Assembly (NCBI RefSeq): GCF_036321535.1
Contig: NC_087436.1
Span: 106,392,001-106,456,000 of the forward strand
Source of the DNA: Camelus dromedarius
Lineage: Eukaryota
Length of the DNA stretch: 64,000 nt
Direction: 5' to 3'
Positions 4,975 to 41,400 of the stretch are shown one piece after another; within the stretch, counting starts at the first letter, position 1; each line of letters opens with the position of its first letter. The notes below the pieces were generated by a model. It ran no database searches, was not told the DNA's origin, and worked only from the letters and a program-made list of their open reading frames with translations. The position numbers were made by a program, and so were the translations under genes.

Positions 4975-5789
4975 ATGCATGTAATTATCAAAGAAATGCA
5001 AATCAAAACTACAATGAGGTACCATCTCATGCTGCTAAGAATGGCCCTCATTAAAAAGTCTACAAAAAATAAATGCTGGAGAGGGTGTGAAGAAATGGGA
5101 ACTCTCTTACACATTTGTTGGGAGTGTAATTTGCGTCAGCCACTATGGAAAATGGTATTGAGATTTCTTGAAAAGCTAAAAATAGAATTACCAAATGATC
5201 TAGCAGTCCCACTCTGGGTATATATTTGGAGAAAACTCTAATTTGAAAANNNNNNNNNNNNNNNNNNNNNNNNNNNNNNNNNNNNNNNNNNNNNNNNNNN
5301 NNNNNNNNNNNNNNNNNNNNNNNNNNNNNNNNNNNNNNNNNNNNNNNNNNNNNNNNNNNNNNNNNNNNNNNNNNNNNNNNNNNNNNNNNNNNNNNNNNNN
5401 NNNNNNNNNNCAACATAGATGGACCTAGAGATTATTATACTAAGTAAGTTAGACAAAGACAAATATTATATGATATCACTTATATGTAGAATCTAAAAAA
5501 ATGACACACATGAACTTATTTATGAAACAGAAATGGACTCAGAGATAGAAAAACTTATGGTTACCAAAGGGGAAGGAGGGGGAGGGATACATTAGGAATT
5601 TGGGATTAGTATATACAAACTACTATATATAAAATAGATAAACAACAAGGTCCTACTGTATAACACAGGGAACTATATTCAATAGCTTGTAATAATCTAT
5701 AATGAAAAAGAATATATATGTATAACTTAATCACAATGCTATTCACCAGAAACTAACACATTGTAAATCAACTATATATCAGTAAAAAC
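4975..5789 (+). mobile_element. 5'-truncated LINE-1 (ORF2 C-terminus plus 3'UTR), cetartiodactyl-type
   Basis: ORF 4975-5241 ([12 protein letters not shown]...[27 protein letters not shown]) matches the L1 ORF2 Cys-rich C-terminus. It is followed by a typical L1 3'UTR (GGTTACCAAAGGGGAAGG..., AACAACAAGGTCCTACTGTATAACACAGGGAAC) and interrupted by an N-run at 5250-5410. Confidence 0.92.
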
Positions 5790-12830: not shown

Positions 12831-14019
12831 TTGCTATTATTTTTATTCTAGCTCATAAAACTCTGAACTCTGAACATTAGGGAAGTAGAGAAAACCCTGT
12901 TCTTTGAAAGTTGAAGGGGAGGGGGGACCAGGAGTACCAGGCTCTTTCCTTTTCTCCAGACTTGTTTATTACTGCGGTAGGTTACCATGGAAACTTCCGG
13001 GATTAGGACGGTATTATTGGGTTAAGCATTCAATAAACACCTCAGGAGAGAAAAGCTATGACATGTATGCATACCGTAAGTAGTTTTCAAATGAGAGGGT
13101 TATTTGGGGGCAAGGAGGGGGTGGCAGTCACTGACTTTCTCATCTCGAGGAGTTTCCTGAGAGAATTATGATCGGGAGTTGAAACTGTGATCATCACCCT
13201 GCTCTGGCCCCTTGGAGGGCCATTCCCTAAAGTTGTCAGGAGTTACAGCCTGAATTTCGAACTGGGAGGCTGCTCTTTACGTCCCAGGGAGTGTGGCTTC
13301 CAAAATAGATTCCGAAGTGGAGAAGAACTCGGAGTGTTTTTTGAGAAGGGTTGACCTCCTTTCATGCCACTTACTGTGAATTAAAGCTGCGAGGGGAAGC
13401 TCGTTTGGGCTTGTGGTACAGCANNNNNNNNNNNNNNNNNNNNNNNNNNNNNNNNNNNNNNNNNNNNNNNNNNNNNNNNNNNNNNNNNNNNNNNNNNNNN
13501 NNNNNNNNNNNNNNNNNNNNNNNNNNNNNNNNNNNNNNNNNNNNNNNNNNNNNNNNNNNNNNNTTTTGTACCCAAGTTACAGGGTGCTCTTCTGCTAACA
13601 GTTCTTAAATGCAAAAGCAAATAGTTGTGGCCACAAAGGGCTTAATACATCTCAGCTGATTTTAGTTCTCAGACTCGAACTGGATGTGACTGGTATTGAC
13701 CTGCTCTGTGCATGTGATTTTCAGGTGGTCTGACTCTCCTCTGTCATTTTGTTGAGTTGTATTAGTCCCCGGGACAAAGGGTGACATATCCCAGCAGAGG
13801 TTAGGGCAGACACTTGACAACGAGAGGAGAAATACTGGTTCTACTAACAGGAGCAGCAGAACAGAGTCCTCGACCCGTGTCTTGAATGCCGGTTTCAGCC
13901 AGTTTGCAAATGTTTAATCAGTTATCAGCATGGAAGGATGCCCTGCATGAGTTCCTTGGATAAAGTATCATCACACGACAGAAATCACAGGGAGCGTGCA
14001 CCAAGGAAAAATTACAGTA

Positions 14020-14345
14020 CAGCTATATTTACTTAGTGCTGCTGCAGTGGGGTTTTATTTTCCACAGTTGGAAGGGGAACCACCTGTCTCACCCGCTGAT
14101 GTCAGAGAGCTCCCTCGAGACACAGGGCTGTTGGAAAGCACATGATACTGTATATATTTGCTCTTATGTCCATATCTGGCTAAGATTGGGTTTCAGATTT
14201 GTGCCCTATTGTGGAGTTCATTGAGCAGTGACTCCCAGGTGCCCTCCCACGTCATCATGCCCTTGTGAATTAAAAAGTAGCCCGTGTGAGCCCCTGTCCT
14301 GAGTGTTCCCTCAACCTGCCACGCACCTATTTTCACTGCAGTGAA
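14020..14345 (+). promoter_or_regulatory. PPARGC1A: PPARGC1A distal (alternative, exercise/cold-inducible) promoter
   Basis: Lies immediately upstream of exon 1b. Variant CRE CCACGTCA (14247-14254); E-boxes CAGGTG (14236-14241), CACCTG (14081-14086) and CAGTTG (14065-14070); TATA-like TTAAAAA (14270-14276); near-consensus MEF2 CTATATTTAC (14023-14032). CRE plus E-box control is established for this promoter in mouse and human. Confidence 0.7.
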
Positions 14346-14377
14346 ATGAATGGCACGCGTCTTGGGGGTTATCATTT

Positions 14378-14395
14378 ATGGATTCAGCTTTGCAA
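14378..14395 (+). CDS. PPARGC1A: Alternative exon 1b coding remnant MDSALQ (ortholog of ...MDSILK of PGC-1alpha-b/alpha4)
   Basis: ATG GAT TCA GCT TTG CAA followed by a strong GTGAGT donor (14396-14401); phase 0, in frame with exon 2. Upstream TTGGGGGTTATCATTT resembles the L-G-L-S-S codons of human/mouse exon 1b. Confidence 0.75.
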
Positions 14396-14411
14396 GTGAG
14401 TATGAAGAGGC

Positions 14412-14438
14412 ATGTTCTGTGCACCCAGTATCCTGCTG
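14412..14438 (+). CDS. PPARGC1A: Candidate exon 1c (1b') coding segment MFCAPSILL (ortholog of MLL of PGC-1alpha-c)
   Basis: ATG TTC TGT GCA CCC AGT ATC CTG CTG followed by GT (14439-14440), in frame with exon 2. ATC CTG CTG sits where ATG CTG CTG is expected. The donor (gtgttt) is weak. Confidence 0.45.
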
Positions 14439-16197
14439 GTGTTTTGGCTTTTAGTTTTCTTTCTAATTATCAAGATTTAAGGGAAAAAACTTTATCTACC
14501 GGATTTAGAGGTTTTATTTGCAGATTGTTAAAAGAGGCAAAAAAGGAATAGGATGTGCCTCTCCTTTTATTTTTATTTATTTATTAAACTTTATTTTTTG
14601 CTTGGTAGCATGTCAGTGTGGGAAAGTTGTTATAGAATGGATGAATGCCTAATGCCTAATTTGGAAAGGCTGAATAGGATGACCTTGCAATTTCAAGGGA
14701 CCTATTGCATGAGTATTATTATTTTTTAAGATGTTCAAAGAACTGTATAAACACTGTCTTTTGTACCTAGGAGAGAATTAGGCCTTTTAAAGGTAGTTCC
14801 TTAAGGCAATCTGAGGGCCGCTGCATTGCACAACGCCAGGGGGCACTGCTTTGGTCGTACTGAAGGATTCACACTTGTACTGTCTTGCTGACTATAGGCC
14901 CAATCCCAGGAAATATGGTGCTATTAGCATTGCTCAAACATTACATAAAAATAGAATTGTTACCGACAATTGCAGAAGGCATGCTATTAGTGAAGTTGTT
15001 CATTACTTTAATAGTGCCATGTATCTGAATTTGAATATCTTTACCAACTTGCAAATTATATGGTTGTTACACAAAATAGGTAGGAAACAGAGTTTCTAAG
15101 AGTGCAAATTACATTCTTGGGCCACATCAAATCAATGTCCTATTAGAGATCAGAACCAGGGTTCTTAATTCCCAGACTTCCCATGCTGCACACCTCCCAT
15201 TAAACTGATATTTTAAAGCATGCTTGGTATCTTTCTCTCAAATCCCAAAAATAGAGTAAATAGGATGGGTTAAGACCCCCTGGTTCATCTAATCTTTCCC
15301 CTCGTGTAAGATTTTCCTCTGAACCATTAAAAGCGTTATAATATATGATTGATATTAATTAGTTTTCTGGAAAGTATTGCACTCCTTAACATGAACTGAA
15401 CTAGAAATAAATATATTACCATGAATTAAAAATTTTATTAGTTGTGAAAAATTGGGTGAAGGCACCTATGTGAAATCCTAAGAGCAGGCGTCAAATTGAA
15501 TTAATGCCAGCACTGCCTTGAGATTAATCTGAGTACTGAATAAGAAATAGTATACCATAACATAACTGTGTTTACTGAATCATTTTTGGCATCAGAAACT
15601 AAAGCTACATTATAGATGCAACAACAGACTTTTCTCCCTTGGAAGAGAGAGGCGGGTGCATTTTGTAATTAAAGTGAATGTTACCCTCTGAAAAATGCTT
15701 CTGGTCTCCAGGAGGAAAACAGTCTTCTTGAGAACATTGCTTCCCTCGGACTTTGCATACTTTGTGCGGCCCTGGCCTTCTCCCACAGCCTAGTAGAGTT
15801 TTATATGATCAGCGCTATTTTCTACCCTCCCAATCTGGAGTCCTGGTTTGGGGGACTCACTTTCTAAATTTCCATCTCATTATTATGTATATGTTTTGAA
15901 AAGTTGTGGAAAGGTGTTGAAAAGATATATGGGATTGCCTCAGGGATGTTCTGTAAGGGATTCCTGATTCTACACGGTGGATGGTTTTACAGCATTTAAC
16001 ACAGGGCTGTGCGGGAAGAGGGTTAAAAATCCAAGGACCACTCTTGACTGGCTGGGATGGGAGTGATGCTCCCCAGAGCTGTGTGCTGCGGGGGCCCTGC
16101 TCTAATACCCCCTTTTATTCTGAAATTTCCTCATCTTGTCATTCATTCATTTTATTGGCATCTATGATATTACTTACTTGAGTGCAAAACTTCAGGC

Positions 16198-26239: not shown

Positions 26240-27136
26240 GTCGGTATTTTTCCCTTACTCCACGGACATTCTTGGTCTCAAACGCAAACTGTACAACCCA
26301 GGGCACTAGGGTTGGAATCCAGTGTTTATTCAAAAAGGCACCCTAAGGCAGTTAGAGGAAATGCTACATGTATGGGGGGGCGGAAAAAAAGGCAGCCGGG
26401 AAACTACGCTGATCTAGGCAGAGCAGCACTGACTGTATTTGCTAACACTTGTTCTCTGAGAGCCTATGAGAGAAATGGAAATAATCAGAAGGAACCTTAA
26501 AGGATGGGATTTTCTTGCTTGTTCTCCTTATATGGAGCACAGCAAACTGCAGTAAGACTTCGGGAGCTGGTATTCCCTACTGCCACGGGCACAGCCGATT
26601 TCTGGGTGGAGGAGTTTGTTTAGACCGTAACAAATATGGGCTGTTTTGTTGATTAAATAAGCAAAGCAAAAAGAAAAGAAAGAAAAAAGTATGCCCCCTT
26701 CTCTGCTTTCAAACACTTCCCCCAATTAGAAAATATCTCATAAAAATGCATCATGTGATAAGATCCTGCTTTAGTCCCAAACCGAGTCCATTTGGATGTC
26801 TTAGAATTTGAGTCCTTAGGGAGTACACATTTTAGCTGNNNNNNNNNNNNNNNNNNNNNNNNNNNNNNNNNNNNNNNNNNNNNNNNNNNNNNNNNNNNNN
26901 NNNNNNNNNNNNNNNNNNNNNNNNNNNNNNNNNNNNNNNNNNNNNNNNNNNNNNNNNNNNNNNNNNNNNNTCAAAGCTGGCTTTAGTCACAGCATGATGC
27001 TCGAAGCCTCCAAAAGTCCAAGTGTTTCCTTTCTTTCTTTCCTCTTTCTGTTTTTTTTTTTCTTTTTTTTTTTAAGCGTTACTTCACTGAGGCAGAGGTC
27101 TGCCTTTGAGTGACGTCACGAGCTTCAGCAGCAGGC
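26240..27136 (+). promoter_or_regulatory. PPARGC1A: PPARGC1A proximal promoter
   Basis: Contains TGCCTTTGAGTGACGTCA. Insulin-response (FOXO1)-type heptamers TATTTTT (26245-26251) and TGTTTTG (26642-26648) lie at spacings similar to the human promoter. A long pyrimidine/T tract spans 27025-27073. Confidence 0.85.
27111..27118. promoter_or_regulatory. Palindromic CRE (TGACGTCA), CREB/ATF2 site
   Basis: Perfect TGACGTCA in the conserved TGCCTTTGAG-TGACGTCA context known from the PPARGC1A promoter. Confidence 0.92.
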
Positions 27137-27406
27137 NNNNNNNNNNNNNNNNNNNNNNNNNNNNNNNNNNNNNNNNNNNNNNNNNNNNNNNNNNNNNNNN
27201 NNNNNNNNNNNNNNNNNNNNNNNNNNNNNNNNNNNNNNNNNNNNNNNNNNNNNNNNNNNNNNNNNNNNNNNNNNNNNNNNNNNNNNNNNNNNNNNNNNNN
27301 NNNNNNNNNNNNNNNNNNNNNNNNNNNNNNNNNNNNNNNNNNNNNNNNNNNNNNNNNNNNNNNNNNNNNNNNNNNNNNNNNNNNNNNNNNNNNNNNNNNN
27401 NNNNNN
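27137..27406 (+). other. PPARGC1A: Inferred position of canonical exon 1a (5'UTR plus first coding segment), hidden by a 270-nt N-run
   Basis: The run starts 18 nt after the promoter CRE, and its length fits the CRE-to-first-donor distance in mammalian PPARGC1A. It leaves a ~5-kb intron 1. The sequence itself is not visible, so this is inference. Confidence 0.8.
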
Positions 27407-28009
27407 CAGCCAGGACCGAAGCTTCCCTCGCGATGCAATTATTCCTGTAAGGGGGGAAGGGCTTGGGCTTGGGCGAGGAGAGGAGAGGAGGCAGAAAAGT
27501 AGCCCGGGCAGCAGCTTTTGGAAGGGAATCTCTATCTTATCTCAACTCCAATAAGTTTGCTATTTTAAGGTGGCTCTGAGATACCTTGAGCAAATCAAAG
27601 CTTAGCTGCTGTCATCAGTATCTGTTGCAGTTAGAAACTCTTTCCATGTGCCTTTGGCTCTGTTTCTACCCATATGCAATATTTATGCTCCAAGATATTG
27701 ATATGAATCAGAGGCTAAAGTCTTTCCAGTGGTGTTTAGTGGCCTGGTTGGAAAAATGCCATTTCTATTTATAATAAGATAAAGATAAAAATATTAAAAT
27801 GGATGTGCTCAGATANNNNNNNNNNNNNNNNNNNNNNNNNNNNNNNNNNNNNNNNNNNNNNNNNNNNNNNNNNNNNNNNNNNNNNNNNNNNNNNNNNNNN
27901 NNNNNNNNNNNNNNNNNNNNNNNNNNNNNNNNNNNNNNNNNNNNNNNNNNNNCTGATTCCTTTAAAACTCCTGTATGTGGTTGAAAGCTTTGGCCGGCAG
28001 ATAAAAAAA

Positions 28010-28029: not shown

Positions 28030-31000
28030 GTATGCCTTACAGTGCAAGGTTTTCCATTCGCCTCGGTGGCAGGGAAGCCAATGGTTAAATCTCTCTGTAC
28101 CACGGAGAGCTGCCTGAAGCCGGAGAGAGAATAGAGTTTATGCAGGACGGTGTGTGGAGCTGCTCGCTGCTTGTGTAAAAATAGACGGCAATACATCAAT
28201 TCCAGCCTCTGCTGGCTACAATTCATACAGGGGGAAAAAAAGCGAGCTGGTTTCCTCGTAATCTCTGGAGTCTAGAGTGACTAGCGGGGGGGACGGAGGA
28301 CCGTGGCGTGTTTGCATTCAACACAATGGAATGTTCTCGGAAAGTTTGGCCAACTTGGGAAACAAGCGAAACTTTCTGTGGACTCTGGTGAGATGGACCC
28401 GAATTGAATTGCAGGGAGGATCTGGGCGGCTAACAATGAATCTGGCACAGGGCTGGGAGTGCGTCCTCTGGGAAGCTGGGGGCACGTAGGGTAAGGGGAG
28501 GATCAAGGGCTACACGTGATTTGATTAAATAAGATGTTCATGTGGTGTGGCGATACACATCTAAAGTGAAAATAATTTGGCCGAGGCCGTCGGCGAGTGC
28601 ATTTTTCCTATCTAGCGAGGCATGCCCTGGATTCTTAACTCTTCGCTGGGTCTGCAAACGCTGGCTCCGTTTACCCTCTCTCGCCTTGGCAGATGCCTCT
28701 TTGCGGATTGTAATTGTTCTTATCTTCTTGTGACTTCTCGGTAAGGGGGACTAGATATGGATAATTCATATGGCCTGCAGCTATTATGAGTCAGGGTTCC
28801 AAGTGGCTTCAAAGTCCTCATTGTCTTCGAGGAGCTGGAGTGTCCTGTGGGTCGCTTGCCTGGCTGGGGCTGTGGGGCTCAGCTGCTGTAGTTTCATTTT
28901 TCCATCATGTATTATTCCTGATGCCGCTAGGAGTTGATTGAGGAACTAGGTCCTATGGAAATATGGCAGATTTATTTTAATCATCGGAGTTCCTGCAGTC
29001 ATTTTCAAATACGCGTCAGAAGCATTGAGAACAGTGACCCTTTAATTTTGCTCTTCAAGAGGTGAGGTCTCGGGCTAATTGTCCAGCCGTGGATTGAGTT
29101 GTCCGGCTGGCTGAGACCGGCCAGTCGCTTTTCTGTTGCACCGGAGGCAGCAAACTGCTAGCAGCCCTGCCTTCCCGGCAGCAGCCCTGGGAATCNNNNN
29201 NNNNNNNNNNNNNNNNNNNNNNNNNNNNNNNNNNNNNNNNNNNNNNNNNNNNNNNNNNNNNNNNNNNNNNNNNNNNNNNNNNNNNNNNNNNNNNNNNNNN
29301 NNNNNNNNNNNNNNNNNNNNNNNNNNNAATAAAGGCCTGTATCCCTATGGCTACTCAGGGTCTCCAGTGCTTCAGTTTAATGAAGGTGGTGTCCAGTAAG
29401 GTTACTAAGATTGATAGGCAGTTCACATGACACAAACTCCACTAAGACTGTCACTCTTTACTGACCCCCGCCCTACCCCCTAACCCTGTCTTGACTAATT
29501 TTTTTTTAAGAAGTAAGATTCTTTTCTTCATTAATGTAATGAATGTGGCCAAGTCCACTCTTTCTTCTCTCTCTCTTTAAAATTTACCATCAATGGCACA
29601 AAAACCTCCAAAAGGTTAATGGAGAATTATACTTAATTATAATGATTCATTATCATCCGTGCAGTGAAGCTAATTTATTGTCGGCTCCTTAACTAAGAGA
29701 AAAATCTGTTGGGGTGAAATAACGTATAATAATTAGCCTTTTGTGTTTAGTGACTGCTTTATCCTCTTAAATCTTATTATAAAATTAAGGCTATGGTGGC
29801 GAAAAAGCTGTCATAGTTGCAAAGAAGCAGTAGAATGTGTCTCTGTAATTGCAATAAAGCACACCTGTTACAGATGTATAGGGAAGCAGTAAATATCAAG
29901 ATGTCAGCTGAGGACAGTTACAGGGCTTGGACGGTTAAGTCTGGCATCATCCAAAGGCCAAATATAAATTAATAACAGGAACACTTGCTACCACTAATGT
30001 GTTTTAGATTATCAGGATAATGCCACATTCAGAAGCCCTGATTTTATTAGCACGTCAACATTGGCAGGAGCAAAGGCACATTTTTCAACTATAACATAAA
30101 AGCAAAAATGAGAGAGACAGAGAGTGAGAGCAAAGGAAAGGAAAGAAATCTGTGAATTACAGCAGAGTGGAATACACAAAATGGATCTGATCTTTTCAGT
30201 AGTTTTCAAAAGTTACTGAAAAATACATCTTTCTGAAAGGTTGAAGGGTTTTGAAGAAGCCATGCCCCGAGAGGGTTGTTACAGAGACAGAAGTCGCTCA
30301 CCAATCGGTAGGGCGCTCTCAGCATTCCAGGACATGGGCTCTAAACGAGGTTCTCCACCCGAGGAATTTAAGCCAGACATAGAGATCCTACGTTTTCTAA
30401 CTTATTTTTAATTTTTGTTGCTGTTCCTGTTGCTTGTGCTTTGTATTTTAAGGACTGTCCCTCCAATCCTAGTGGTTTTGGCACCACTGAAAAAGTTAGC
30501 GCCTGGTCTCTGAGTCACCTCGTCTTTTGCAGTGGAGGAGTTAACGCTGCGCGTTTGTGATTGGAGGACAAGCAGTGGGCAAGTGCGGAGGCTGGGAAGT
30601 GTTACACCCACAACAAAACACGAACATTGTACCAGACGAAGTCCCTTCAGCCCAGCCTCCACTTCCTTAGAAACCTTGTCAAGTATACCAATCTGTAACT
30701 TTAGGCTAACTCCGATAATTGAAAAGGAAAGTCCAATACAATGATAAGGAAGGAGATGGCCCTGTCTTTGCAGTACCTCTGTGCCTGCAACCTGGGATCC
30801 CACTGGGGCCCCGTAGTCTTAGGGAGGAACTGCAGGAATTTTCAGGCTCCTCCCATCCTCCCCTTACGAACTGCTGACTCCATTACCCAGTACCTACTTC
30901 TCAGCGTGGCGCTGACGATCACACTGCTGCATATGACCCGTGTAATGTAGCCTGCCAGGGATGACAGGGGTGCCTGGAAAAAAAAATCCGCATAAAACTT

Positions 31001-32339: not shown

Positions 32340-32519
32340 TGTGCTGCTCTGGTTGGTGAAGACCAGCCTCTTTGCCCAGATCTTCCTGAACTTGACCTTT
32401 CTGAACTAGACGTGAACGACTTGGATACAGACAGCTTTCTGGGTGGACTCAAGTGGTGCAGTGACCAATCAGAAATCATATCCAATCAGTACAACAATGA
32501 GCCTTCGAACATATTTGAG
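32340..32519 (+). CDS. PPARGC1A: PGC-1alpha coding exon 2 (180 nt, phase 0/0)
   Basis: Polypyrimidine tract and ...ctcctgcag|TGT acceptor; TTTGAG|gtaagg donor. The 60 codons read CAALVGEDQPLCPDLPELDLSELDVNDLDTDSFLGGLKWCSDQSEIISNQYNNEPSNIFE, matching PGC-1alpha exon 2. Candidate branch point TTAAC at 32302-32306. Confidence 0.98.
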
Positions 32520-38400: not shown

Positions 38401-41400
38401 AGAATGTTGAAACTCATGGAGACTTATGGTGTATTTTAAAAATTTATGTTGTACTTATCTTTGCATTTGTAGTCTACCACAAAATTCCAAAGTCTGGGTA
38501 TAAATCAGTTCGATGTTCATCTTGGAGAGTCACAAATCAGGAAGCAACAATCTGACCCAGCCTGTGCTGCTGTACTTCTGCTGGCTTATCTGGCAGGGAG
38601 ACTCAATAGTGTTCTTGCGTGTGTTTTCTGTTTGGGTGTGTGTTCATCCACACACCTCACTGAAAGACCGTTTTAGGCTCCGATAACATCTGCCTTATCT
38701 TGGGAACATCTGGTTTATCACCCTGTTTCTGCCCTGCCATCATGCTGACCACTGGAAAAATACGGCTCAGGAGTTCTGACCCCACCAGGCCATGTTTCTG
38801 GGCATTAACCCCTCCTAATAAAGAGTAAGTCGCAGTGTGCCGGTTACCTGATACTTACCATTACTAACTTTCCTGATGATTGGCTTTTATTAGCATAAGC
38901 TGTGGTTACAAAAGATGAGGTCGGCTGCTGGGTTTCGTGGAAGTCAGTCTAGTTCTCAGCCATGTGCAGTTTGGAAAGTGAGAATCCAGGCAGTTCGTGA
39001 GGCGCTGTCATTGCAGGACGCGCTAGTTTGTGTTTTTGTGGCGTGGGGACCAGCTCTTTCACGTCTGATACTCCGGCCACTCCAAGAAGGAGGTGCGTCA
39101 TTTTGTGAGCCTATCACAGGCTTGCCTCACCTCCTGGACCCACAGGTGGGTCATTTAACTAGAAAATGCTCTGCCTGGATATCTTTGGAGCCAAAAAGTG
39201 GAGACCCACATTGACAAGGAGGAAAAATTGGAGAGGAATCACGAAAACAGTGGCTCATTGCCCCTTAGGTTGACTTCAGAGGTATTAGTCATGGTTAAAG
39301 TGATCAAGATTCAGGATGCTGCATGGGACAAACTGTCTATTTGTATAACAACTGTGTGTGCTTGCGTAGGAACCTCATACCTACGCCGTGTCTGTTTGTC
39401 CACGTCCCCATCTGCATTGCAATGTCGTGGAAACACAGCCCAGCAGATGGCTCACCTCTGAGTGAGATCAACACACAGAGCAGATAAAAAGACGAACATT
39501 AGAGACCCGAAGCCAAACTGTTCTTCTCCTGTTCTCCAGCCCAGACTTCACATTTTTAACAAGATTAATCTGTTCCTATAATTATGTGCCTGTTCTTTTA
39601 GCAATGAAAACTTTTATCATGGGTTTTATAAAAGGAATCACCTGTGATGTAAAACAATTCTGTAAGGGCCATTTTTTTCCCTTCTCTAACCTCTCAGGTT
39701 ACTTTCAGGACTGCGTACCCTGAGGTAGAGTTTGAAGGCAAAGCAGGATTCTGGGTTTTACTGTAGCCTGTTGAAGATGCTGAAGTGCTCAAGTGAGAGC
39801 AAGAGAAAAGGGGAGAGAGAGACACAAGGAAATACACACTCTTACTCTTGGCTCAGGCAAAATTTTACGAAGATAAATGACTTCTTATCCATTATGCCAT
39901 TTGTCCTAAAGTGATGATAGGAGGTACTTTTGTGCCTTTTCTGTTCCAAAAGGATAGAATCATTTGCATAGTTTCAGATTCTAAACGCTGATACTTTGTA
40001 GACCTGCCCATCTCCATTACTAGGGCAGGTTATTCATTCATGGTTTGCAGCCAGATAGATTAATGAATTACCAGATCTTGCGTAAAATGACTTGGCCTGA
40101 CTTTTAAACAACTACCCCCCCCCTTTTTTTTCTCTCTCTCTCTCTCTCTTCTTTTTGGCCAGTCTTGTGATTGGTGTCAATGGGCTCTAGACATCAAGCC
40201 CCCTCTAGAGTTCATATTTGTTTTTTCTTTCTCAGAAGTAGCTTTGTTAAACTATTTCCCCCCCTTTTTCATTCTCTTCCAAACTTCTGCTCAGAAGCAG
40301 TCAGTTCAAGGAGGTAACTGCAGGCTGATTAGGGAGGAGCAAGGCAACGCCGATACCAAACCCTTGGTGGCCGATGGCGCTCCCTGTGCTGCACCAGCGC
40401 GGGTTCTCGGAGCCTGGTCCGCAGCACGTCCAAGTTCCGAGTGAATTCCTTGGCGTTTCTCGCACAGTGTGCAGAATTGGAGCTCTGAACTTTGAAGGAA
40501 AGCCTCAGAGCTATTTGCGAAGTGCGAGTGCTTAGTGAATACTAAATTACACGTAGGAAATCGTCTGCTGCTACCAGGGTTACTTCATTTTTATTCCTGA
40601 CACAGACACCTAAATCAGAGAACAGTAACATTTCAAAGATTATGGAAGCAGTTTGGGTCNNNNNNNNNNNNNNNNNNNNNNNNNNNNNNNNNNNNNNNNN
40701 NNNNNNNNNNNNNNNNNNNNNNNNNNNNNNNNNNNNNNNNNNNNNNNNNNNNNNNNNNNNNNNNNNNNNNNNNNNNNNNNNNNNNNNNNNNNNNNNNNNN
40801 NNNNNNNNNNNNNNNNNNNNNNNNNNNNNNNNNNNNNNNNNNNNNNNNNNNNNNNNNNNNNNNNNNNNNNNTATTAAGGATTTAATAAAGTAACTTAATA
40901 AAAATGGGTAGCTTAGAACACTTAATAGGAAACGATTGTGATTTAACGCGGAACTCGAGCCTGGTGTTTAATGTTCTGGGTGATATTGTGCTAAAGTGAA
41001 GTTGAGCGAAGCACCTGGAAGAAACCAGGACGGTGAGAGGCGCAGAGCTGCTTGTCTGAGACACTGACGGCCACAAACTAAATAGCTTCCGGCGACAATG
41101 TACAGTGGGCCGCACATCAGTCAATCTAAGCAAAGCACACACACCACTTTCTATTAATAAAAAGCTCATTGAAATGATAATCGCCTTCCATTGCATGTTT
41201 GATACGTGCCATACGCACGGAGAGCACTTAACATTATTCCAAAATGGAGCTCAGCGCGAATTTTGCTGTGGCAAATGGGATTGAGCTGCAGAATATTGCC
41301 ATGTGATAAAAGAGGAGAAGGCTAAGTTCAGACGAAGATGGCTGTACACACAGGCTGCAAATTGCTATTCCTGGCTGTTCATGAGAGATCATAAAAGCAA

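What the first reader, a model, noticed from the sequence alone, without database searches (positions are those of the whole stretch)
14402..14444. Exon 1c (1b'): MLL start appears lost (ATG>ATC) and replaced by an in-frame upstream ATG giving MFCAPSILL
Established: a second donor in the alternative first exon yields PGC-1alpha-c/alpha3, which starts MLL. Seen here: 43 nt past the 1b donor is ATC CTG CTG|gt (14430-14440), so Ile stands where Met is expected. Exactly six codons upstream, GGC-ATG (14412, -3 G) opens an uninterrupted frame MFCAPSILL that joins exon 2 in phase. From memory the rodent sequence there is GGCATTC, with no ATG. Inference: a second compensatory start-codon shift in the same exon, which suggests selection to keep the isoform translatable with a new N-terminal extension.
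Basis: partly seen in the sequence, partly recalled or inferred. Interest (0 to 1): 0.7.

Follow-up and report, generated by a model that had tools for sequence, protein, structure and literature searches.

The report
Camel PGC-1α exon 1b′ start shift
In this camel genome the minor "PGC-1α-c" first exon of the energy-metabolism gene PPARGC1A has ATC where mouse has its start codon and an in-frame ATG six codons upstream, but nothing found here shows that this splice form is made or that the new ATG is more than a coincidence.

Summary
The 1b donor is CAA|GTGAGT at 14395/14396. Forty-three bases on lies ATC CTG CTG|GTGTTT (14430-14438, GT at 14439). ATG 14412 opens MFCAPSILL, which would join exon 2 (starts 32340) in phase. 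Published mouse primers and mouse proteins confirm that mouse has ATG at the ATC position and GGCATTC, with no ATG, at the camel ATG position.

The claim of a compensatory, selected start shift is not supported:
- Only mouse and human could be compared. Both have a 50-nt extension and camel has 43 nt. Both are Euarchontoglires, so ancestral and derived states cannot be told apart.
- An open in-frame ATG upstream of 14430 arises in 25-41% of dinucleotide shuffles.
- ATG 14412 is the fifth AUG of the leader. Three upstream AUGs open ORFs that overlap it.
- The second donor is weak, at the 86th percentile of GTs in the window against 99.5th for the 1b donor.
- Four RNA runs hold exon 1b words but none crossing the 1b donor. 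Four others run on past the second donor. None shows the pattern expected of 1b′ splicing.

Verdict: an orthologue of a known minor exon, with a start codon probably of little consequence.

The parts
14378..14395 (+). Coding end of alternative first exon 1b: ATG GAT TCA GCT TTG CAA, giving MDSALQ, in phase with exon 2
   Evidence: Matches the human and mouse 1b primers ..ATGGATTCAATTTTGAAA|.
14396..14401 (+). 1b donor GTGAGT (CAA|GTGAGT), strong
   Evidence: approximate PWM +5.2 bits, 99.5th percentile of all GT in the window. Four RNA runs hold exon 1b words but none that cross this point.
14396..14438 (+). 43-nt exon 1b′ extension, orthologue of the mouse and human 50-nt extension
   Evidence: First 17 nt match the human primer at 15/17 and the mouse primer at 13/17. 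Last 13 nt match the mouse junction primer at 11/13.
14412..14414 (+). In-frame ATG (G at -3, T at +4) that opens MFCAPSILL. Mouse has GGCATTC here; camel has two extra bases, GGCAT[GT]TC.
14430..14432 (+). ATC at the position of the mouse ATG of MLL
   Evidence: One search compared with mouse primers and mouse proteins P0058 and P0186
14439..14444 (+). Candidate 1b′ donor GTGTTT (CTG|GTGTTT), weak
   Evidence: approximate PWM -0.5 bits, 86th percentile of GTs in the window. Use in camel RNA was not observed.
14346..14404 (+). Four upstream AUGs at 14346, 14350, 14378 and 14402. The uORF from 14346 ends at 14399. In a 1b′ transcript the other three run out of frame across ATG 14412 into exon 2.
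32340..32519 (+). Exon 2 (CAALVGEDQ...NIFE), acceptor cag|, donor GAG|GTAAGG
   Evidence: 100% identity to mammalian PGC-1α

Best explanation
This is the camelid orthologue of the known alternative first exon 1b/1b′ of PPARGC1A, the exercise- and cAMP-inducible distal promoter. Exon 1b and its strong donor are intact and give an MDSALQ-initiated PGC-1α-b. The second donor, 43 nt downstream, is positionally conserved, but the AUG that opens the 3-residue MLL N-terminus in mouse is AUC in camel. The in-frame AUG six codons upstream is most likely a by-product of neutral sequence turnover in what is 5′ leader or intron for nearly all transcripts. That turnover comprises two extra bases and a net 9-nt shortening relative to mouse. 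If the weak second donor is used at all, the transcript would yield little or no protein from AUG 14412, which sits behind four upstream AUGs, three of them opening ORFs that overlap it. Shown: the sequence states, the orthology to the mouse site, the frames, the uAUGs and the chance expectation. Inferred: low use of the donor, poor translation and absence of selection.
For: Orthology to the mouse and human 1b′ exon rests. Extension length is 50 nt in mouse (GTGAGTAA plus the 14 codons of P0186) and 50 nt in human (amplicons of 188 and 153 bp with a shared reverse primer), against 43 nt in camel. In one search, 25-41% of dinucleotide shuffles give an open in-frame ATG. In one search, ATG 14412 is the fifth AUG, ATG 14402 has A at -3, and the 1b′ donor scores -0.5 bits against +5.2 for the 1b donor. 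RNA runs X2, X4, X7 and X8 hold 28-61% of the words of 14230-14445 but none of the 8 sampled words of 14366-14500. The chance that none of those 8 words lies within the extension is about 1.5%. Runs X3, X5 and X6 hold all 8 words and X1 holds 6 of 8, so they run past the second donor and look unspliced. No run shows the roughly 0.4 share expected of 1b′-spliced RNA. PMC5727290 reports that RNA-seq junctions in human muscle show only the b forms from this promoter and that the others are negligible.
Against: The last 13-15 nt before the second donor are well conserved between camel and mouse, which could reflect constraint on the donor. The frame from ATG 14412 to the donor is open, and the 9-nt length difference is a multiple of three. 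G at -3 is an acceptable initiation context. Mouse PGC-1α-c also sits behind upstream AUGs yet is treated in the literature as a real isoform. Logan contigs drop rare variants, and the tissues sampled were not exercised muscle or cold-exposed fat, so absence of a 1b′ signal is weak evidence.
Confidence: 0.6

Rival explanations
1. Camelids lost the MLL AUG and an upstream in-frame AUG was fixed by selection. A PGC-1α-c-type protein is therefore still made, with a new 9-residue N-terminus, MFCAPSILL.
For: ATG 14412 is in frame and open to the donor, with G at -3. Mouse has no ATG there. The donor-proximal bases are conserved. The state is identical in DNA runs under two organism labels.
Against: The chance expectation is 25-41%. 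Four upstream AUGs precede it, including one with A at -3 only 10 nt upstream. The donor is weak. No RNA run has a 1b′-only pattern. The direction of change is unresolved. The isoform is negligible in human muscle RNA-seq.
Confidence: 0.12
2. Nothing was lost in camel. ATC, or another non-ATG codon, is the older state, and the MLL start is a gain in the rodent or rodent-primate lineage. On this view the 1b′ form was never a coding isoform in camelids.
For: Only Euarchontoglires comparators show or imply the ATG. I could confirm the ATG itself only for mouse. The human codon at this position was not recovered. The 50-nt versus 43-nt difference cannot be polarised.
Against: Human muscle does make 1b′-derived transcripts from a 50-nt extension like that of mouse, which suggests the arrangement is at least as old as the primate-rodent ancestor. 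Strong similarity around the donor in camel suggests a shared ancestral element.
Confidence: 0.18
3. The second donor is used, but translation starts elsewhere. It would start either at the near-cognate CUG codons 14433 or 14436, giving an almost MLL-like end, or at the first in-frame Met of exon 3, giving an N-truncated protein like liver L-PGC-1α.
For: CTG CTG is retained directly before the donor, with A at -3 of the first CUG. Exon 2 contains no Met. Isoforms that start inside exon 3 are described in mouse heart (PMC9338484).
Against: There is no experimental hint for either start. The overlapping uORFs would suppress these starts as well. Exon 3 is not in the window, so it could not be examined.
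Confidence: 0.07

Closest known systems
Mouse PGC-1α-c / PGC-1α3 / NT-PGC-1α-c (exon 1b′, N-terminus MLL)
   Same: It uses a second 5′ splice site inside alternative exon 1b, a few tens of bases past the 1b donor, joined in phase to exon 2. The last 13 nt match at 11/13 and the first 17 nt at 13/17.
   Different: Camel has ATC instead of the ATG. Its extension is 43 nt rather than 50 nt. It has an ATG created at GGCAT[GT]TC, and an extra upstream ATG at 14402 where mouse reads AAC. Use of the donor in camel is not shown.
Human PGC-1α exon 1b′-derived transcripts (Silvennoinen 2015, PMC4632948)
   Same: The extension starts the same way (GTGAGTATCAGGAGGCA against camel GTGAGTATGAAGAGGCA, 15/17). 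The transcript is low in abundance relative to exon 1b forms.
   Different: The human extension is 50 nt by amplicon arithmetic. I could not recover the human letters at the two codons in question.
PGC-1α-b / PGC-1α4 (exon 1b, mouse N-terminus MLGLSSMDSILK)
   Same: It uses the same promoter and exon, the strong donor is kept, and the MDS..L. tail is conserved.
   Different: In camel only the second ATG is available, giving MDSALQ. That is the subject of the separate note s1-179964, not of this finding.
'Exon 1c' of Oehler et al. 2022 (PGC-1α-d, PMC9338484)
   Different: It is a different exon, downstream of exon 1a. Its camel counterpart is at about 28331-28387. The finding concerns exon 1b′, so the label '1c' is ambiguous.

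Membership tests
PPARGC1A exon 1b′ (first exon of PGC-1α-c/α3) | Lies within the distal alternative first exon 1b, upstream of exon 1a and exon 2 | tested here: met
   The exon 1b coding end at 14378-14395 matches the mouse and human 1b primers. Exon 2 is at 32340. Exon 1a is not readable because it is masked N, but the exon that follows it in mouse is at about 28.3 kb. That places 1b about 13-14 kb upstream of 1a, as in mouse.
PPARGC1A exon 1b′ (first exon of PGC-1α-c/α3) | A second GT donor a few tens of nt past the 1b donor, homologous in sequence to the mouse junction | tested here: met
   Camel CAGTATCCTGCTG|GT against mouse CACTATGCTGCTG|. The extension is 43 nt against 50 nt.
PPARGC1A exon 1b′ (first exon of PGC-1α-c/α3) | Donor in phase 0 with exon 2 | tested here: met
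   the frame of CTG CTG| continues into TGT GCT GCT.
PPARGC1A exon 1b′ (first exon of PGC-1α-c/α3) | An AUG three codons before the donor, giving MLL | tested here: not met
   ATC at 14430-14432. DNA runs under two organism labels hold the same words.
PPARGC1A exon 1b′ (first exon of PGC-1α-c/α3) | The 1b′-exon 2 junction present in RNA | tested here: inconclusive
Word shares show 1b-type ends in 4 RNA runs and read-through past the second donor in 4, with no 1b′-type pattern. This is indirect and of low power.
Compensatory start-codon turnover (loss of one AUG offset by gain of an in-frame AUG under selection) | Loss and gain fall on the same lineage, and the gain exceeds the chance expectation | tested here: inconclusive
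   The direction of change cannot be inferred from mouse and human alone. Chance expectation for an open in-frame ATG is 25-41%. No Laurasiatherian or outgroup sequence could be fetched.
Compensatory start-codon turnover (loss of one AUG offset by gain of an in-frame AUG under selection) | The new AUG is used for initiation | not testable with these tools
   This needs ribosome profiling, N-terminal proteomics or reporters. In silico, four AUGs precede it.

The most novel reading that the evidence does not exclude
Camelids still make a PGC-1α-c-type coactivator from the inducible distal promoter, but with a lineage-specific 9-residue N-terminus (MFCAPSILL). It would have arisen when a 2-nt insertion supplied a new in-frame AUG as the old one decayed. 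That would be an example of selection preserving a minor alternative N-terminal isoform of a master metabolic regulator in a desert-adapted mammal.
Probability: 0.1. Interest if true: 0.45.

Novelty: new member of a known kind. Interest (0 to 1): 0.22.

Why it matters
PGC-1α isoforms from the distal promoter carry most of the exercise and cold induction of this gene, and whether the minor c/α3 form has a function of its own is unsettled. A lineage in which its start codon is absent is a small natural test. If the isoform were kept translatable by a replacement AUG, that would argue for function. If not, as the present evidence leans, it adds to the RNA-seq evidence from human muscle that the 1b′ form is dispensable splicing noise beside the b forms. 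Either way this is a modest, gene-specific point and not a new mechanism.

Tried and rejected
Read-level tests
No junctions could therefore be seen.

Attempts to fetch orthologous DNA, all without success
- The exon 2 peptide search and the representative search returned only canonical, brain-type or intron-read-through N-termini, plus mouse isoforms.
- The 57-aa ORF over the site (14378-14548) has no relative in the protein collection.
- The muntjac and dolphin loci (L001-L003) reach only about 10-11 kb upstream of exon 2, short of exon 1b.
- Mouse P0186 and rat P0188 are not on record as genes.
- A pattern conserved in human, mouse and camel exon 1b is absent from the metagenome and prokaryote genome collections.

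Other searches that led nowhere
- Searching 165-527-aa relatives and listing cluster members gave no Laurasiatherian 1b or 1b′ N-terminus. The polar-bear partial N-termini (LSLSCRDFL, IASAGLTYYEQQ) do not resemble the camel or mouse extension, and I rejected them as orthologues.
- Paper searches for camel-like primer strings and for the 1b peptide found nothing useful. Two reviews or primary papers were not held. The chicken alternative-promoter paper concerns other exons.

Full report
**What is in the sequence**

The window carries the 5′ part of a mammalian PPARGC1A gene.
- Exon 2 begins at 32340 after cag| with TGT GCT GCT CTG GTT GGT GAA GAC (CAALVGED...) and ends at GAG|GTAAGG. Its 60 residues are identical to PGC-1α of many mammals.
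- At 14378 the sequence reads ATG GAT TCA GCT TTG CAA, followed by GTGAGT. This matches the published exon 1b/exon 2 junction primers of mouse (CATGGATTCAATTTTGAAA|TG) and human (CTATGGATTCAATTTTGAAA|TGTGC). This is therefore alternative first exon 1b.
- Notes by other agents on other windows of this genome call it a camelid, probably dromedary. I did not test that.
- The 43 bases after the 1b donor (14396-14438) read GTGAGTATGAAGAGGCATGTTCTGTGCACCCAGTATCCTGCTG and are followed by GTGTTT.
- ATG 14412 opens MFCAPSILL, which would run into exon 2 in phase. ATC is at 14430-14432.
- Frame B is closed just upstream by TGA at 14397-99 and at 14403-05.

**Is it the orthologue of the known 1b′ exon?**

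Yes. Two independent mouse primers that span the 1b′/exon 2 junction read CTATGCTGCTG|TGTGCTG (PMC4106048) and CACTATGCTGCTG|TGTGCTG (PMC9338484 supplement). Camel has CAGTATCCTGCTG| there, 11 of 13 bases identical, with ATC in place of ATG.

Three mouse proteins agree with this:
- P0058 (PGC-1α3) starts MLL|CAALV.
- P0187 (PGC-1α2) starts MLGLSSMDSILK|CAALV.
- P0186 (EDL37648.1) is an open-frame translation reading PEAFSPHLRPTMLL|CAALV.

The mouse α3 forward primer AAGTGAGTAACCGGAGGCATTC occurs in five papers. Together with P0186 it fixes the mouse extension as GTGAGTAA plus 14 codons, which is 50 nt, with GGCATTC and no ATG.

For human, the 1b′ primer is TGAAA|GTGAGTATCAGGAGGCA. The 1b and 1b′ amplicons are 153 and 188 bp with one shared reverse primer. 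That reverse primer ends 133 nt into exon 2 by the camel coordinates, which reproduces the 153 bp exactly. The human extension is therefore also 50 nt.

Relative to mouse, camel has two extra bases at GGCAT[GT]TC, which create the ATG. It has a net 9 nt fewer between TTC and CCC A.T AT. CTG CTG.

Camel also has ATG at 14402, where human reads ATC and mouse AAC.

**Is the ATG a compensation?**

Four lines of evidence weigh against reading it that way, and none is decisive.

1. The direction of change is unknown.
   - The only comparators I could reach, mouse and human, are both Euarchontoglires.
   - With camel as the single Laurasiatherian, neither the ATC/ATG difference, the ATG 14412 insertion nor the 43/50-nt length can be assigned to a branch.
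   - I did not recover the human letters at either codon.

2. Chance is high.
   - I made dinucleotide-preserving shuffles of the sequence upstream of 14430, using the 34-nt extension only, 90 nt, or 170 nt.
   - An in-frame ATG with no later stop appears in 25%, 41% and 34% of the shuffles respectively.
   - The region holds 5 ATGs where base composition predicts 2.8.

3. Translation from 14412 looks unfavourable.
   - In a 1b′-spliced transcript, 14412 is the fifth AUG.
   - The 14346 AUG opens a 17-codon uORF that ends at 14399.
   - The 14350 AUG opens a 52-codon uORF.
   - The 14378 AUG opens a 26-codon uORF.
   - The 14402 AUG, with A at -3, opens an 18-codon uORF.
   - The last three run out of frame across 14412 into exon 2.
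   - The mouse MLL AUG also follows two AUGs, so this handicap is a matter of degree.

4. The donor is weak.
That is the 99.5th percentile of all GTs in the window.
   - It gives CTG|GTGTTT -0.5 bits, the 86th percentile.

**RNA evidence**

I worked beside those places and sent none of their letters to any search tool.

As a substitute I used the two run searches as a coarse probe.
- For 14230-14445 (18 sampled words), eight RNA runs hold 28-78% of the words.
- For 14366-14500 (8 sampled words), every 31-mer necessarily crosses the 1b donor. Only X3, X5 and X6 (all 8 words) and X1 (6 of 8) are holders. X2, X4, X7 and X8 hold none.
- If words are sampled evenly, the chance that none of the 8 lies within the extension (starts 14366-14408) is about 1.5%. 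The chance that none crosses or follows the second donor is below 0.1%.
- Four runs therefore behave like RNA that leaves the genome at the 1b donor. Four hold sequence that continues past the second donor, which looks like unspliced RNA or DNA.
- None shows the intermediate share of about 0.4 expected of 1b′-spliced RNA alone.

This supports use of exon 1b and its donor in camel tissues and gives no support for 1b′. Its power is low, because Logan contigs drop rare variants and the tissues are not induced muscle or fat.

DNA-like runs under two organism labels hold all sampled words across the site. The ATC and ATG letters are therefore not an assembly slip.

**Context from the literature**

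The 1b′ form is a minor species even where it is best known.
- In human muscle at rest its Cq is about 2.5 cycles later than that of 1b, and it is often undetectable (PMC4632948).
- RNA-seq junction analysis found only the b and NT-b forms from the alternative promoter, with the others negligible (as summarised in PMC5727290).

Little selective pressure on its start codon is therefore plausible.

**Conclusion**

The site is a true orthologue of exon 1b′, and the MLL start is absent in camel.

I put the idea that ATG 14412 is a selected replacement at about 0.1. It is untested and has no positive support beyond the coincidence of frame.

The most likely picture, at about 0.6, is neutral turnover in a leader or intron segment that matters little, because the b forms carry the function of this promoter.

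The label 'exon 1c' is ambiguous. Oehler et al. 2022 use it for a different exon downstream of 1a, and camel also has that exon.

**Limits of what was searched**

No eukaryote genome collection was reachable. The several attempts to fetch orthologous DNA or annotated 1b/1b′ N-termini from other Laurasiatheria failed.

Noticed in passing
window 28331-28387 (+), donor GT at 28388: This is the camel counterpart of the 'novel exon 1c' (PGC-1α-d) of Oehler et al. 2022. TCTGTGGACTCTG|GTGAGA matches the mouse junction primer TTTGTGGACTCTG| at 12/13. An in-frame ATG at 28331 would give MFSESLANLGNKRNFLWTL before exon 2.
   Followed up: partly
window 14402-14404: Camel has ATG, with A at -3, directly after the 1b donor, where the human primer reads ATC and the mouse primer AAC. 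In any transcript that reads through the 1b donor this adds a well-placed upstream AUG, out of frame with exon 2.
   Followed up: partly
window 14346-14395: In exon 1b itself only the second Met of the mouse MLGLSSMDSILK is available, giving MDSALQ. Upstream ATGs at 14346 and 14350 are out of frame. This is the subject of the separate note s1-179964.
   Followed up: no
window 14236-14276: Upstream of exon 1b lie an E-box CAGGTG (14236), a CRE half-site CGTCA (14250) and an A-rich TTAAAAA (14270). They fit the cAMP/CREB- and MyoD-responsive distal promoter described in mouse and human. They were located by motif only.
   Followed up: no
window 27816-27952 and other N runs (5250-5410, 13424-13563, 26839-26970, 27137-27406, 29196-29327, 40660-40871): Canonical exon 1a (MAWDMC...) is not readable anywhere in the window and probably lies in a masked N run just upstream of 28.3 kb.
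   Followed up: no
runs X1 and X2: The RNA runs with the most exon 1b words are labelled 'reproductive system metagenome'. This hints that the distal PPARGC1A promoter is active in a camel reproductive tissue. It could not be checked without laying reads.
   Followed up: no
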